A stretch of 64,000 nucleotides of DNA from Heteronotia binoei (GCF_032191835.1 NC_083237.1:12834001-12898000), one strand, 5' to 3'; counted from the stretch's first letter, positions 2,953 to 61,172 are shown. The notes: generated from the sequence alone by a model not told the origin. Program-made: numbers and translations.

Positions 2953-2968
2953 GGCTCTTAAAAGAGCC
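2953..2968 (-). terminator. Histone 3' stem-loop of H2A copy 1
   Basis: GGCTCTTTTAAGAGCC on minus, followed by ACCCA and the purine-rich HDE AAAGAGAGCTG. Confidence 0.95.
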
Positions 2969-3001
2969 GTTGGATTTCTTTTTTGGAGCGCAGAACCAGC
3001 T

Positions 3002-3391
3002 TTATTTCCCCTTGGCCTTGTGGCTCTCGGTCTTCTTGGGCAAGAGGACGGCCTGGATGTTGGGCAGGACGCCGCCCTGGGCGATGGTNNNNNNNNNNNN
3101 NNNNNNNNNNNNNNNNNNNNNNNNNNNNNNNNNNNNNNNNNNNNNNNNNNNNNNNNNNNNNNNNNNNNNNNNNNNNNNNNNNNNNNNNNNNNNNNNNNNN
3201 NNNNNNNNNNNNNNNNNNNNNNNNNNNNNNNNNNNNNNNNNNNNNNNNNNNCCGGCTCCCACCCGCTCCGCATAGTTACCTTTGCGCAGCAGACGGTGGA
3301 CACGACCTACGGGGAACTGCAGCCCCGCCCGGGAAGACCGAGTCTTTGCCTTGGCTCTGGCTTTGCCTCCTTGCTTGCCACGTCCAGACAT
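3002..3391 (-). CDS. H2A: Histone H2A (replication-dependent), copy 1; centre masked by N (3089-3251)
   Basis: [46 protein letters not shown]...[28 protein letters not shown]; 129 aa; stem-loop downstream. Confidence 0.96.
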
Positions 3392-3770
3392 TTTTCTTTT
3401 TTTCTGACTATTTCAGCCTCTGCAACCCTGGATCAGAATAACTTGCAAAAAGCCTCCTAGGCGCTTTTTATTTGTGCCGCGAGCTTGCAGCTGCAAACGC
3501 TCACTGGCTGCATGCATGCACGTGACTCGTCCGTCCAATGGGAAAAGGAGTTCTCAGTAGCTCACGGTTCGGTTGGACGGTCTGTCCAATGGGAGCAGAG
3601 AAGAAATAGCTCCGGGTGATTTGAGTGGGTGCCCGGCTAGGAGCGGAACATTCGACCAATCCGGTGCAAACAGGCTCGCCACGGTAATTGGCACAAGGGG
3701 ATATAAATGCAGTGCAGATACGCCACTAACAATTGGTTTGTTCTTTGTTGGGAAGTGAAGTGGCCTCATA
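3392..3770. promoter_or_regulatory. Divergent H2A/H2B promoter, pair 1
   Basis: 380 bp between head-to-head ATGs; CCAAT boxes (~3535, ~3586, ~3656); TATAAAT at 3702-3708; no canonical ATTTGCAT octamer. Confidence 0.8.
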
Positions 3771-4151
3771 ATGCCCGAGCCAGCCAAGTCTGCGCCGGCG
3801 CCCAAGAAGGGCTCCAAGAAAGCGGTGACCAAGACGCAGAAGAAGGGCGACAAGAAGCGCAAGAAGAGCCGCAAGGAGAGCTACTCCATCTACGTGTACA
3901 AGGTGCTGAAGCAGGTGCACCCGGACACGGGCATCTCCTCCAAGGCCATGAGCATCATGAACTCCTTCGTCAACGACATCTTCGAGCGCATCGCCGGCGA
4001 AGCCTCCCGCCTGGCCCACTACAACAAGCGCTCCACCATCACCTCCCGCGAGATCCAGACCGCCGTGCGCCTCCTGCTGCCCGGGGAGCTGGCCAAGCAC
4101 GCCGTCTCCGAAGGCACCAAGGCCGTCACCAAGTACACCAGCTCCAAGTGA
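3771..4151 (+). CDS. H2B: Histone H2B (replication-dependent), copy 1
   Basis: Complete 126-aa [22 protein letters not shown]...[10 protein letters not shown], intronless, stem-loop downstream. Confidence 0.99.
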
Positions 4152-4190
4152 AAAGGGGGAAGGGATCCAAAGCCCTCTTCGAAACCCAAA

Positions 4191-4206
4191 GGCTCTTTTA
4201 AGAGCC
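4191..4206 (+). terminator. Histone 3' stem-loop of H2B copy 1
   Basis: CCAAA-GGCTCTTTTAAGAGCC-ACCCA; HDE AAAAGAGCTG at 4222-4231. Confidence 0.97.
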
Positions 4207-57807: not shown

Positions 57808-58130
57808 TCAAGGTTGGCCTTCGGGGTAACGCAAGCACCATTCGCAGGCATTCTGGAACATGCGTAGCCAGGGGGAAACCCTCAGCGACTGGCGCCAAGA
57901 GCTCGGCATCCACGGCCACTGCCAGGGAAGGACGCAACGCTCAGGGTGAGGCATCATGGCCAAGTGGCGTCCATCAGGGGAACAAACGCCTGCGATGCCC
58001 AGGGGAGACCCATTGGGATTCAGAGGGTACTCCTCAGTCGGCTGCCCCTGATCGTCCACATAGCGTAGCGGGACCAGCCGGGCGGAGCGCATGCGATCGA
58101 GGATTTCAGTTGAGCGAAACTGCATCCGAC
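57808..58130 (-). CDS. PFAS: Phosphoribosylformylglycinamidine synthase, last coding exon
   Basis: (G)RMQFRSTEILDRMRSARLVPLRYVDDQGQPTEEYPLNPNGSPLGIAGVCSPDGRHLAMMPHPER..SPWLRMFQNA: glutaminase His/Glu motif; acceptor cag at 58131-58133, phase matches the upstream exon. Confidence 0.95.
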
Positions 58131-58149
58131 CTGATCGGAGGAGGAAAAA

Positions 58150-59188
58150 GAAGAGAAGAGACTGGATTTATACCCCACCCTTTGCTAGCCAAAGGAGTCT
58201 CAGAGCAGCTTACAAATCTCTTTTCCCCTCCCCACAAAAGACATTCTGTGAGGTGGGTGGGGCTGAGAGAGCTCTGTCAGTCAGTCAGTCAGTTTATTGC
58301 GGCTCTAGGCCAATCAACAACAACAACAACAACTCATCAATAACAGTACAACACAACACCAAGCTAAAATATAACACAACAATATAAAACTATGTACAAC
58401 CATCAAAATAGTAATAAAATTATCTGACGTAGGCAACACTTAACTAAGGGCACCTTCTTTCAAATACAAACAGCATTAAGTTTCTTCCTGTCAAGGTCGG
58501 CAACATATAGAAACTTAGCAAGATCCAGAGAAAGTTGATCACTCCCATCCCCTAAGAGGAAGTAAATGACTTGGGCCTGATTCAAAGATTTAGCTAGCAT
58601 TAGATGGTTCCGCAGAAGTCTGTACCTTGCCTCTGTGTGGAAAAGACAGTTCAGAATGAGATGGGGAACCGTATCGACCTCCTCCAGGCCGCATGGACAG
58701 ATCCTGTCTTCTAACGGGATCTTGTGGAAACGGCCACTCAGTACTGCTGTGTCAAGAATGTTCAGGCGTGCCAAGGACAGCATCCGCCTGATCTTGATTG
58801 GCTGTATCTTTTCAAGATACCTGGCACATTTAAGATCACTTATAAAAAAGGTTGGGATATACGTCCCCCCAACTTTGGCCAGAGATTGTTTTAACTCCAA
58901 TTCCAGTAATCGGTCTCTGATAATTACTTTTGCCCCGTTCTTGAACATGAGGGCTAGGGAATCAATATTCAGATCACATTCCTCTAGTTTGGAATTTAAT
59001 TTCCTCAACCAATTGCTAACAAATGAGTCATAGAGAGAGCTCTGACAAACTGCTCTTGAGCAGAACAGCCTTGAGAGAACTTGTGGCTGACCCAAGGGCA
59101 CATCAGCAGGTACAAGTGGAGGAGTGGGGAATTGAACCTGGTTCTCCCAGATAAAAGTCTGTGCACTTAACCACTACACCAAACTGGC
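58150..59188 (-). mobile_element. tRNA-derived SINE (family A) split into 58150-58276 and 59033-59188 by a LINE insertion
   Basis: The two halves join into a complete copy like 20052-20321. Confidence 0.8.
58277..59032 (-). mobile_element. Non-LTR retrotransposon 3' fragment with a CCHC knuckle (RTE-X-like), (TGAC)n tail
   Basis: Open frame ..YLEKIQPIKIRRMLSLARLNILDTAVLSGRFHKIPLEDRICPCGLEEVDTVPHLILNCLFH..; AATAAA then (ctga)n; 12-bp TSD gagagagctctg at 58265-58276 and 59033-59044. Confidence 0.8.
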
Positions 59189-60750
59189 ACAGGATGAATA
59201 CACACTAGTGTTCCCTCTAAAGTGAGTTGGTGTGAGCTAGCTCCGGCTCACAAATTTTTGTCTTAGCTCAGGAAAAATTGTCCCAGAGCAAACTAATTGA
59301 TGCAGCAGGTCACAACTTTAATGCCCGAAGCTCACAAAGTGGAATTTTCAATCACAAGACCCCACAGCTTAGATACACGCATGAAGCTGCCTTCTAGTGA
59401 ACCAGAACACCCTGGGTCCATCAAAGTCAGCCTTGTCGATTCAGATCGACAGCAGCTCTCAGGGGTCTTAAGTGAACGCCTCTGACATCACCTGCTGCCT
59501 TGTCCTTTTAGCAGGAAAGGGCTGAGCACTGGGCCTTCTGCATGCAAACCAGAGGCTCTACCGTTGAGCCAAGTCCTGCATGTTTCGCACGAGAAAGTCC
59601 TCACAGAATCCAGGAGGAAACACGTGAAGTTGCCTTATACTGAACCAGACAGACTCCCAAGGTCTAGCAAGGTCAGTATTGTCTACTCAGGCTGGCAGCT
59701 GCTCTCCGGGATCCCACAGAAGCCTTTCACATCGCCTCCCCTCTGACCCCGTTAACTGGAGACGCTGGGGATTGAACCCAGGGATCATCTGCAGAGGCTC
59801 TACCCAGGGCCAGATTAAGAATTAGGCCAAGTAGGCACCGGTCTATGGGCCCCATGCTGGCTCCTCACCCCGCATCCCCAGTTTTCCGCCTGCTTGCAGC
59901 CCTCCCAGCCTGCGTGCGCAACCAGCAGCTGAACTGCTTTTTGCCCGACCTGCCTGGTGCAGCTGCTGCTGGCGTTGTCACAAGTTTGCCTCTCCCTCGC
60001 AGCTTTCTCAAAGAGGCTTTTGGGAAGGGGCCCACAGGCTGCGGTGGGGGGGGGGGGCACTCAGAGTCTGAGATTACTTGCAAGATTTTGACTGCCTAGG
60101 GGCCTCCACAGAGTTTAATTCAGCACTGGATCTACCACCTGCCTCTTCCATCAACAGAACCTAACGCTTTCACCGGAACTTGAACCCAGGGCTTTCTGCA
60201 TGTAAAGCAGCTATGAGAACCCCTATACTATGAAAACCACTGCTGGGATGAGTGGGACCCCAATCATATTTATATTATAGCCTCTCTGTACTGGCCAATG
60301 AAGATCAGGGGTCGCCACGACTGGCACAAGAACAAAACTTACATCGGTGTGAACTTATTTATCCTTTTCCCCCCTGTATTTCATATTACAAAATTGCCTT
60401 TATAGGAATTGTCAGACTTAACAGGTACCTGAACGAAAAGATTCATAATATAAAATATTACAACGTTGACGGTGTTCAGCTTAGAGATAACAATATGTGA
60501 CAATGTGTGTATTTCAAGAAAGTATTGCAGACGTAGACTTGTATTCCTTGAAAGTAACTTTATGCAGAACAAGGTTAATATGTATTCTGTTTTCTACTTC
60601 CCCTCTTCCCTGACCCTACTTTTTTCATTCCTAAACTAATCAAACTTTTTAAAATTGAAGGACAAAAACTTACAAACAAGGTAGGATCCTACCCCATGGC
60701 GCTTTCTGAATCCAGTAGCAGCAGCCCCCAGTCCCCCCCCAAATAATTAC

Positions 60751-60903
60751 CTTCTCCGTGAGCCACCCAGATGCCGAGGGTAGAACCGGCCATACCCCGC
60801 AGCATCAGCGCCGGACTTTCCTCGACGTTCAGGGTCACAAAACGCGATTCAAAGCGACCAGAACTGTTGGGGCTCAGCAGCAGGCCTGGTTTGGTGAAGC
60901 CGC
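60751..60903 (-). CDS. PFAS: PFAS penultimate coding exon (153 nt)
   Basis: (G)GFTKPGLLLSPNSSGRFESRFVTLNVEESPALMLRGMAGSTLGIWVAHGE(G); tag acceptor and gtaatt donor; not in the ORF track. Confidence 0.93.
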
Positions 60904-61010
60904 CTACAAACAGCCAGACCAGAGGTTCACAAGAAGCCCACGATGCAGGACAACCTCCCCCCAGGAGAAACGGCTGGAGTCAACATCCGCCAAGGAGGAT
61001 CTCCTCTTAC

Positions 61011-61172
61011 CTGCTACAGCTTCGGCGTCTGGGTTTCCAGCCCCCACCCAGCCGAGCAAGGCCATCAGCTGGCAGCCATTGCACACGCCCAGGCTGAAGG
61101 TGTCTTTGCGACGGTGGAAGGCCTGGAATTGAGCCCGTGCTCGGGGGTTGAAGGTCACAGACGCAGCCCAGC
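61011..61172 (-). CDS. PFAS: PFAS third-from-last coding exon (162 nt)
   Basis: (G)[43 protein letters not shown]..: catalytic Cys motif GVCNGCQ; tag acceptor and gtaaga donor. Confidence 0.95.

What the first reader, a model, noticed from the sequence alone, without database searches (positions are those of the whole stretch)
2953..61172. Interleaved histone and tRNA cluster directly abutting PFAS
Seen: 7 histone genes and 20 tRNA loci (18 anticodon types) alternate over ~51 kb, ending ~3.3 kb from the PFAS polyA site. Established: the large mammalian histone/tRNA co-cluster is at human 6p22, while human PFAS lies at 17p13.1 beside a separate tRNA cluster without histones. Inference: this locus combines both architectures. 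It may preserve an ancestral linkage that was split in mammals, or histone genes may have colonised the PFAS-linked tRNA cluster in squamates. A shared proliferation-linked domain (purine synthesis, histones, tRNA) is speculative.
Basis: partly seen in the sequence, partly recalled or inferred. Interest (0 to 1): 0.7.

Follow-up and report, generated by a model that had tools for sequence, protein, structure and literature searches.

The report
Squamate histone/tRNA cluster next to PFAS
In this gecko, an ordinary-looking cluster of histone and tRNA genes ends 3.3 kb past the purine-synthesis gene PFAS, and the same gene order occurs in a wall lizard, so it is an old lizard-lineage arrangement and not an assembly error or a new kind of system.

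Summary
The window is Heteronotia binoei chromosome CM063339.1. It carries 7 intact replication-dependent histone genes: two divergent H2A/H2B pairs, one H1 and two H3. Each has a 3' stem-loop and a downstream purine-rich element. The last tRNA lies about 3.25 kb from the PFAS poly(A) signal.

The N runs inside H2A and H3 are exact-length masks, not assembly gaps.

The order PFAS, Ile-AAT, Val-TAC (opposite strand), Ser-GCT, iMet, Leu-CAG, H3, H2A is identical in gene and strand in Podarcis muralis. An annotated PFAS model of the gecko Euleptes europaea runs into the same-strand H2B. A misjoin is therefore excluded, and the junction predates the gecko-lacertid split.

No histone gene lies within 10 kb of PFAS in a turtle, two birds, an alligator, a caecilian, a frog, a paddlefish or a lion. 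The alligator has tRNA genes there only. "Ancestral linkage split in mammals" is thus unsupported at this scale, and a lepidosaur- or squamate-lineage origin of the junction is favoured but not proven. Nothing supports a shared "proliferation domain".

This is a new member of a known kind (histone/tRNA co-cluster) and of modest interest.

The parts
3002..3391 (-). Histone H2A gene (core masked by N at 3089-3251); stem-loop at 2928-2973
   Evidence: ORF of 390 nt with H2A N- and C-termini; RF00032 38.5 bits
3771..4151 (+). Histone H2B gene, divergent partner of the H2A; stem-loop at 4186-4231
   Evidence: Pfam Histone 7.6e-26; RF00032 38 bits; TATA at 3702 and CCAAT boxes
5355..5426 (-). Decayed tRNA-Gly(TCC)-like pseudogene
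   Evidence: ARAGORN only; below the Rfam gathering score; substitutions relative to the copy at 11907-11978
7312..7383 (-). tRNA-Pro(TGG)
   Evidence: (54.3 bits)
10939..11020 (+). tRNA-Ser(AGA)
   Evidence: 64.5 bits
11907..11978 (+). tRNA-Gly(TCC)
   Evidence: 63.6 bits
15971..16633 (-). Linker histone H1 gene; stem-loop at 15885-15932
   Evidence: Pfam Linker_histone 1.3e-20; RF00032 26.4 bits with a perfect GGCTCTTTTCAGAGCC; CCAAT and TATA upstream
18456..18501 (-). Orphan histone stem-loop: remnant of a tandem copy of the H3 3' flank
   Evidence: RF00032 32.7 bits; 18231-18514 is 81.8% identical to 18972-19256
19287..19697 (-). Histone H3 gene (core masked at 19290-19578); stem-loop at 19197-19242
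   Evidence: N-terminal 39 aa of H3 within a 411-nt frame; RF00032 30.9 bits
20932..21015 (+). tRNA-Leu(AAG)
   Evidence: 57.3 bits
21257..21330 (+). tRNA-Asn(GTT)
   Evidence: 68.4 bits
25061..25134 (-). tRNA-Lys(CTT)
   Evidence: 65.1 bits
25570..25651 (-). tRNA-Leu(TAG)
   Evidence: 58.8 bits
27229..27301 (-). tRNA-Lys(TTT), with acceptor-stem and T-stem mismatches; possibly decaying
   Evidence: (57.2 bits)
31353..31426 (-). tRNA-Asp(GTC)
   Evidence: 59.4 bits
31831..31902 (-). tRNA-Gly(TCC), identical to the copy at 11907-11978
33605..33686 (-). tRNA-Ser(AGA), identical to the copy at 10939-11020
37677..37759 (+). Intron-less tRNA-Leu(CAA) with a Leu(CAG)-type body
   Evidence: (52.7 bits)
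39589..39683 (+). tRNA-Ile(TAT) with an intron
   Evidence: 55.3 bits
45503..45577 (-). tRNA-Ile(AAT)
   Evidence: 61 bits
46421..46801 (-). Histone H2B gene (same strand as PFAS); stem-loop at 46341-46386
   Evidence: ORF identical in protein to the H2B at 3771-4151; 97.4% DNA identity including the 3' flank; RF00032 40.2 bits
47299..47688 (+). Histone H2A gene (masked at 47439-47634); stem-loop at 47721-47767
   Evidence: RF00032 43.2 bits
48913..49323 (+). Histone H3 gene (masked at 49032-49320); stem-loop at 49368-49413
   Evidence: RF00032 41.3 bits; the mask has exact length
50791..50873 (-). tRNA-Leu(CAG)
   Evidence: orthologous position in Podarcis
51728..51799 (-). Initiator tRNA-Met(CAT)
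   Evidence: orthologous position in Podarcis
52867..52948 (-). tRNA-Ser(GCT)
   Evidence: orthologous position in Podarcis
53674..53746 (+). tRNA-Val(TAC)
   Evidence: orthologous position and opposite strand in Podarcis
54179..54252 (-). tRNA-Ile(AAT), the last gene of the cluster before PFAS
   Evidence: orthologous position in Podarcis.
57521..57526 (-). PFAS poly(A) signal AATAAA
   Evidence: sequence read
57808..58131 (-). PFAS last coding exon (aa 1232-1338 plus stop)
   Evidence: Pfam GATase_5 9.2e-40; 100% identical to P0209
60749..60901 (-). PFAS penultimate coding exon
   Evidence: exact peptide match to P0209
61009..61173 (-). PFAS exon (aa 1127-1181)

Best explanation
This is the PFAS-proximal ~52 kb of a larger replication-dependent histone plus tRNA gene cluster on a chromosome of the gecko Heteronotia binoei.

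Each gene is its own transcription unit. The intronless histone genes have CCAAT/TATA promoters, and their mRNAs end at the conserved stem-loop and purine-rich downstream element (SLBP/U7-type processing, inferred). The tRNA genes are Pol III units with internal promoters and T-run terminators. PFAS ends at its own AATAAA 3.3 kb away.

The junction PFAS / five tRNAs / H3-H2A-H2B is a fixed, old squamate microsynteny, at least as old as the gecko-lacertid split. It most likely arose in the lepidosaur or squamate lineage, either by a rearrangement or by local birth-and-death growth of the cluster. It is not a relic that mammals split. Co-location with PFAS is most likely a neutral accident of genome organisation, with the tRNA genes possibly acting as boundaries (inferred, untested).
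For: Genes and cis-elements.

Identity of the window and exact-length masks.

Conservation: Podarcis muralis L002 has PFAS(+), Ile-AAT(+), Val-TAC(-), Ser-GCT(+), iMet(+), Leu-CAG(+), H3(-), H2A(-), with two histone stem-loops. The window shows the same order and relative strands. The Euleptes europaea PFAS model ends in a full H2B that is 99% identical to the window's same-strand H2B.

Outgroups with no histone ORF or stem-loop within 10 kb of PFAS: Pelodiscus, Nyctibius, Struthio, Alligator, Rhinatrema, Spea, Polyodon and Panthera. Their flanking protein-coding genes differ from lineage to lineage.

Birth-and-death or gene conversion inside the cluster: the H2B copies are 97.4% identical including the 3' flank, and a decayed copy of the H3 3' end is present.

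Earlier scan notes place more histone and tRNA genes up to at least 37 kb before the window start.
Against: Only 10 kb on each side of PFAS could be read in other species, so histone genes 10-500 kb away in outgroups would have been missed.

The tuatara, marsupials, monotremes, gar and sharks were not examined.

The alligator has one strong tRNA gene (Ser-CGA, 67 bits) and two weak ones 6.6-8.3 kb 3' of PFAS. Humans have tRNA genes just beyond CTC1, next to PFAS (PMC8113476). A PFAS-tRNA linkage may therefore be older than squamates.

Confidence: 0.7

Rival explanations
1. Ancestral linkage. The amniote or vertebrate ancestor had one histone plus tRNA cluster next to PFAS. Squamates keep it, and mammals and others split it into a 6p22-type histone/tRNA cluster and a 17p13.1-type PFAS/tRNA region.
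For: tRNA genes lie close to PFAS in the alligator, in Podarcis on both sides and in humans beyond CTC1 (PMC8113476; PMC7567086). Histone/tRNA co-clustering exists in humans at 6p22 (PMC8113476). The window shares Lys-TTT, Leu-TAG, Ile-AAT and Ser-AGA with the published human chr17 tRNA sets.
Against: No histone gene lies within 10 kb of PFAS in eight outgroup species spanning turtles, birds, a crocodilian, amphibians, a ray-finned fish and a mammal. The flanking protein-coding genes differ in every lineage. The overlap of 4 of the 9 published human chr17 anticodon types is about what chance gives (expected ~3.1, given 16 of ~46 types in the window). In mammals the tRNA genes sit on the 5' side of PFAS, not the 3' side.
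Confidence: 0.17
2. Functional co-regulated "proliferation domain". PFAS, the histone genes and the tRNA genes are kept together because they share S-phase or growth-linked chromatin control.
For: The only evidence is that the junction has been conserved since the gecko-lacertid split. This is equally expected from neutral retention of a short interval.
Against: The linkage is absent in all eight non-squamate vertebrates sampled, so it is not needed for PFAS or histone function. Each unit has its own promoter and terminator signals. The 3.3-kb spacer is mostly repeat-derived.
Confidence: 0.04
3. Assembly misjoin between the cluster and PFAS in this gecko assembly.
For: None was found. The reads tool could not be used.
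Against: An independent assembly of another family (Podarcis) has the same seven-gene order and strands. A Euleptes gene model spans PFAS and H2B. The public record has no gaps over 47.8-64 kb of the window.
Confidence: 0.01

Closest known systems
[quoted passage not shown]
   Same: Replication-dependent H1, H2A, H2B and H3 genes with stem-loop 3' ends. Divergent H2A/H2B pairs. Many heterogeneous tRNA genes interspersed among the histone genes. PMC8113476 reports 157 tRNA genes over 2.67 Mb hosting histone genes, and PMC11008083 lists the histone clusters.
   Different: This cluster is much denser: 19 tRNA genes and 7 histone genes in ~52 kb. No H4 lies in this window. The flanking gene is PFAS, which in humans is on 17p13.1. 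Orthology to the mammalian cluster was not tested.
Human 17p13.1 tRNA gene groups near PFAS (downstream of CTC1; PER1, HES7 and ALOXE3 tDNA clusters with insulator activity)
   Same: tRNA genes lie close to PFAS. Some anticodon types are shared (Ile-AAT, Ser-AGA, Lys-TTT, Leu-TAG) (PMC8113476, PMC7567086).
   Different: The human tRNA genes lie on the 5' side of PFAS, beyond CTC1, and there are no histone genes. Here the cluster abuts the PFAS 3' end, and the squamate 5' neighbour is a ZP-domain gene, not CTC1. The overlap in tRNA types is no more than chance.
Other histone clusters of the same gecko genome (earlier scan notes)
   Same: Histone genes mixed with tRNA genes, and small conserved squamate satellite loci.
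   Different: Those loci are 7.3 Mb before and 10.9 Mb after this window, or on other chromosomes. Only this one abuts PFAS.

Membership tests
Metazoan replication-dependent histone genes | Intronless ORF of canonical length encoding H1, H2A, H2B or H3 | tested here: met
   ORFs of 390 nt (H2A), 381 nt (H2B), 411 nt (H3) and 663 nt (H1); Pfam Histone and Linker_histone. The H2A and H3 cores are masked, but frame and length are preserved.
Metazoan replication-dependent histone genes | 3' stem-loop (RF00032) followed by a purine-rich histone downstream element | tested here: met
   Five pass the gathering score. Two score 26-31 bits but have canonical sequence.
Metazoan replication-dependent histone genes | S-phase-coupled, non-polyadenylated expression | not tested
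Nuclear tRNA genes (Pol III type 2) | Cloverleaf scoring above the Rfam tRNA gathering score and recognised by ARAGORN | tested here: met
   19 loci at 52-68 bits. Three further tRNA-like hits were rejected as a pseudogene or SINE heads.
Nuclear tRNA genes (Pol III type 2) | Oligo-T terminator shortly downstream | tested here: met
   A T-run of at least 4 within 25 nt for nearly all 19.
HIST1/6p22-type histone-tRNA co-cluster | Several histone classes including H1, interspersed with heterogeneous tRNA genes | tested here: met
   H1, H2A, H2B and H3 in three groups separated by tRNA groups of 4, 10 and 5.
HIST1/6p22-type histone-tRNA co-cluster | Orthology to the mammalian cluster (shared flanking genes) | tested here: inconclusive
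   The only flanking protein-coding gene seen is PFAS, a 17p13.1 gene in humans. The far end of the cluster lies outside the window.
17p13.1-type PFAS-linked tRNA cluster | Same position relative to PFAS and CTC1 as in mammals | tested here: not met
   In the lion, CTC1 is head-to-head 5' of PFAS, and the human tRNA genes lie downstream of CTC1 (PMC8113476). Here the cluster is 3' of PFAS, and the squamate 5' neighbour is a ZP-domain gene.
17p13.1-type PFAS-linked tRNA cluster | Shared tRNA gene content | tested here: inconclusive
   4 of the 9 published human chr17 anticodon types are present, against ~3.1 expected by chance.

The most novel reading that the evidence does not exclude
The squamate locus preserves an ancestral amniote super-cluster in which the 17p13.1-type (PFAS-linked) tRNA genes and a histone cluster were one locus. 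The alligator's tRNA genes 3' of PFAS and the human tRNA genes beyond CTC1 would then be its remnants, and the mammalian separation of PFAS/tRNA from histone/tRNA would be secondary.
Probability: 0.12. Interest if true: 0.5.

Novelty: new member of a known kind. Interest (0 to 1): 0.3.

Why it matters
Lizards and snakes have few tRNA genes overall; PMC8044555 puts them on a par with some birds, or with yeast at 275. A ~50-kb stretch with 19 tRNA genes and 7 histone genes, part of a still larger cluster, is therefore a major supply locus for both translation and chromatin.

A seven-gene microsynteny that has been stable since the gecko-lacertid split is also a useful landmark for squamate comparative genomics. 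It can help annotation too: it already caused at least one PFAS-H2B fusion model in a public annotation.

A 2026 survey of histone loci in more than 250 species (PMC13525598) mentions neither reptiles nor tRNA co-clustering, so the arrangement appears to be undescribed. It does not point to any new mechanism.

Tried and rejected
Only local scripts handled the whole window (self-comparison; coordinate and motif scripts).

L001 turned out to be the same genome as the window. I used it only for coordinate offsets and N counts, did not read the letters under the masks, and do not count it as independent support.

Two encoding-contig look-ups (Chelonia isoform X5, Carettochelys isoform X2) found nothing on record.

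Findings look-ups for CTC1, AURKB, RANGRF and related genes, and for 6p22 or 17p13, gave nothing useful.

The overlap of anticodon types with the published human chr17 tDNA sets is no better than chance, so I rejected it as evidence.

I looked for a recent large inverted duplication to explain the mirrored order (H2A-H2B ... Ser-AGA, Gly-TCC / Gly-TCC, Ser-AGA ... H2B-H2A). Only the H2B genes and the tRNA genes themselves align, so any such duplication is old or the mirror order is coincidental.

The carnivore "tRNA" hits in the lion locus and two odd-length hits in the ostrich locus were rejected as SINE-like or spurious.

No paper linking PFAS with histone or tRNA clusters was found.

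
Full report
**What is in the window**

ARAGORN finds 21 tRNA-like loci and Rfam finds 20. Nineteen are found by both, at 52-68 bits:
- Pro-TGG
- Ser-AGA (two copies)
- Gly-TCC (two copies)
- Leu-AAG, Asn-GTT, Lys-CTT, Leu-TAG, Lys-TTT, Asp-GTC
- Leu-CAA
- Ile-TAT, which carries an intron
- Ile-AAT (two copies)
- Leu-CAG, initiator Met, Ser-GCT and Val-TAC

Nearly all have an oligo-T terminator within 25 nt.

Three further hits are not tRNA genes. The locus at 5355-5426 is a decayed Gly-TCC copy. 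The loci at 5671-5743 and 60165-60237 are tRNA-like heads of SINEs, and the second lies in the last PFAS intron.

ORF listing and Pfam give seven histone genes:

| Gene | Coordinates | Strand |
|---|---|---|
| H2A | 3002-3391 | - |
| H2B | 3771-4151 | + |
| H1 | 15971-16633 | - |
| H3 | 19287-19697 | - |
| H2B | 46421-46801 | - |
| H2A | 47299-47688 | + |
| H3 | 48913-49323 | + |

The first H2A/H2B and the second H2B/H2A are divergent pairs. Every gene is followed by a canonical stem-loop plus AAAGAGCT element. Each is preceded by CCAAT and TATA motifs in the right orientation.

The layout along the window is: [H2A H2B], 4 tRNA loci, [H1 H3], 10 tRNA genes, [H2B H2A H3], 5 tRNA genes, then PFAS. 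"Interleaved" is a fair description.

An eighth, orphan stem-loop at 18456-18501 sits in an 81.8% direct copy of the H3 3' flank. It is a relic of a partial tandem duplication.

**PFAS**

Three minus-strand exons lie at 61173-61009, 60901-60749 and 58131-57808. They match GATase_5 and are 100% identical to residues 1127-1338 of Heteronotia binoei PFAS. AATAAA lies at 57526-57521, about 3.27 kb from tRNA-Ile(AAT) at 54252.

**The N runs**

The scan's program asked for these to be tested first.

- The runs inside H2A (3089-3251, 47439-47634) and H3 (19290-19578, 49032-49320) keep the ORFs at exactly 390 and 411 nt.
- The window has a constant offset to the public record of H. binoei (GCA_032191835.1, CM063339.1; window position w corresponds to record position w + 12,834,000). 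This offset holds across the runs at 49032-49320 and 53278-53408, and that record has no N there.
- These runs are therefore exact-length masks, and the flanks are continuous and in frame. I did not read or fill the masked letters.
- For 4869-5017, 30529-30816, 38506-39103 and 40097-40249 I cannot tell mask from gap. No histone stem-loop lies near any of them.

**Is the junction real?**

I used the last PFAS exon to obtain PFAS proteins of other vertebrates. I then fetched each PFAS locus with 10 kb of flank.

In the lacertid Podarcis muralis the 3' flank reads Ile-AAT(+), Val-TAC(-), Ser-GCT(+), iMet(+), Leu-CAG(+), H3(-), H2A(-). Two histone stem-loops are present. The genes, order and relative strands are the same as in the window at 54179, 53674, 52867, 51728, 50791, 48913 and 47299.

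The annotated PFAS of the gecko Euleptes europaea ends in a complete H2B that is 99% identical to the window's same-strand H2B. This is a fusion artefact that is only possible if H2B follows PFAS there as well.

A misjoin is therefore excluded. The junction dates to before the split of geckos from other lizards; the age of that split is established knowledge and was not computed here. In both squamates the 5' neighbour of PFAS is a ZP-domain gene.

**Outgroups**

| Species | What lies within 10 kb of PFAS |
|---|---|
| Pelodiscus (turtle) | No tRNA or histone gene |
| Nyctibius (bird) | No tRNA or histone gene |
| Struthio (ostrich) | A zf-HIT gene 3'; two odd-length ARAGORN hits near the PFAS 5' end judged spurious |
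| Rhinatrema (caecilian) | No tRNA or histone gene |
| Spea (frog) | ELO-family and trypsin-like genes 3' |
| Polyodon (paddlefish) | A TLD-domain gene 3' |
| Panthera leo (lion) | CTC1 head-to-head 5'; only SINE-like tRNA hits |
| Alligator sinensis | One strong tRNA gene (Ser-CGA, 67 bits) and two weak ones 6.6-8.3 kb 3' of PFAS; no histone; flank almost gap-free |

tblastn with the window's histone proteins and a stem-loop motif scan found nothing in any outgroup locus.

**Comparison with humans, from papers**

- The largest human tRNA cluster, at 6p22.2-p22.1, has 157 genes over 2.67 Mb and hosts histone genes (PMC8113476). The canonical histone clusters are at 6p22, 1q21, 1q42 and 12p12 (PMC11008083).
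- On human chr17, tRNA-Ile-AAT-4-1, Ser-AGA-2-6 and Thr-AGT-1-2 lie immediately downstream of CTC1 (PMC8113476). Further tDNA groups lie at PER1, HES7 and ALOXE3 (PMC7567086).
- CTC1 is head-to-head with PFAS (lion). The mammalian tRNA genes are therefore on the 5' side of PFAS, whereas the squamate cluster is on the 3' side.
- The window shares 4 of the 9 published chr17 anticodon types, against about 3.1 expected by chance.

**Reading**

The locus is a genuine, functional-looking end of a large histone/tRNA cluster. Earlier scan notes place more histone and tRNA genes up to at least 37 kb before the window, and other histone clusters elsewhere in this genome.

The genes are independent Pol II and Pol III units. 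Near-identity of the two H2B copies including their 3' flank (97.4%) and the decayed H3 3' copy show birth-and-death or gene conversion within the cluster.

The histone-PFAS adjacency is conserved in squamates. It was not seen in any of eight outgroups at the 10-kb scale. This favours an origin in the lepidosaur or squamate lineage over retention of an ancestral linkage.

Three limits apply:
- The tuatara was not available.
- Only 10 kb per side could be read.
- The alligator and human data leave room for an older PFAS-tRNA (not histone) association.

Nothing supports a co-regulated proliferation domain.

I found no paper describing this arrangement.

Noticed in passing
window 18231-18514 vs 18972-19256: The orphan histone stem-loop (18456-18501) lies in an 81.8% direct copy of the 3' flank of the neighbouring H3 gene. 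It is a relic of a partial tandem duplication, not a free-standing element.
   Followed up: partly
window 37677-37759 vs 50791-50873: The intron-less tRNA-Leu(CAA) differs from the Leu(CAG) gene at only 5 of 83 positions, one of them in the anticodon. This is consistent with an anticodon switch of a CAG-type gene.
   Followed up: partly
window 8600-14270 and 40830-42100, 55140-55414: Long tandem arrays of a ~67-bp unit (86-95% identical between copies) occur at 8.6-9.7 kb and 13.0-14.3 kb, in inverted orientation to each other. Related copies occur at three other sites.
   Followed up: no
window 27697-28259, 35071-37574, 56418-56806: Fragments of a non-LTR retrotransposon (endonuclease and reverse-transcriptase ORFs, Pfam Exo_endo_phos and RVT_1) are inserted between tRNA genes and in the spacer before PFAS.
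   Followed up: partly
window 58460-59101 (-): A 213-aa ORF with no Pfam match lies inside the last PFAS intron. It is possibly a retroelement C-terminal domain.
   Followed up: no
window 15971-16633 (-): The C-terminal tail of H1 contains an atypical stretch (…[24 protein letters not shown]…) between the globular domain and the Lys/Ala/Pro-rich tail. This may be a diverged H1 subtype.
   Followed up: no
window 27229-27301 (-): tRNA-Lys(TTT) has mismatches in the acceptor and T stems although it scores 57 bits. It may be losing function.
   Followed up: no
L003 537-1928 (Pelodiscus sinensis): A second, diverged PFAS-like C-terminal region (56-87% identity to the gecko exons, by exon) lies ~8 kb upstream of the turtle PFAS gene. 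Chelonia mydas has a 2035-aa PFAS model. Together these suggest a tandem PFAS duplication in turtles.
   Followed up: no
L010 (Struthio camelus CM081622.1): The ostrich PFAS lies on a chromosome-named record of only 851 kb, next to a zf-HIT gene.
   Followed up: no
P0288 (Euleptes europaea PFAS, nr): This public gene model fuses PFAS (lacking its last exon) to a complete histone H2B. It is an annotation artefact caused by the conserved PFAS-histone adjacency.
   Followed up: yes
L002 6099-6170 (Podarcis muralis): A high-scoring tRNA-Gln(CTG) lies ~4 kb 5' of PFAS, between the ZP-domain gene and PFAS. tRNA genes therefore flank PFAS on both sides in this lizard.
   Followed up: no
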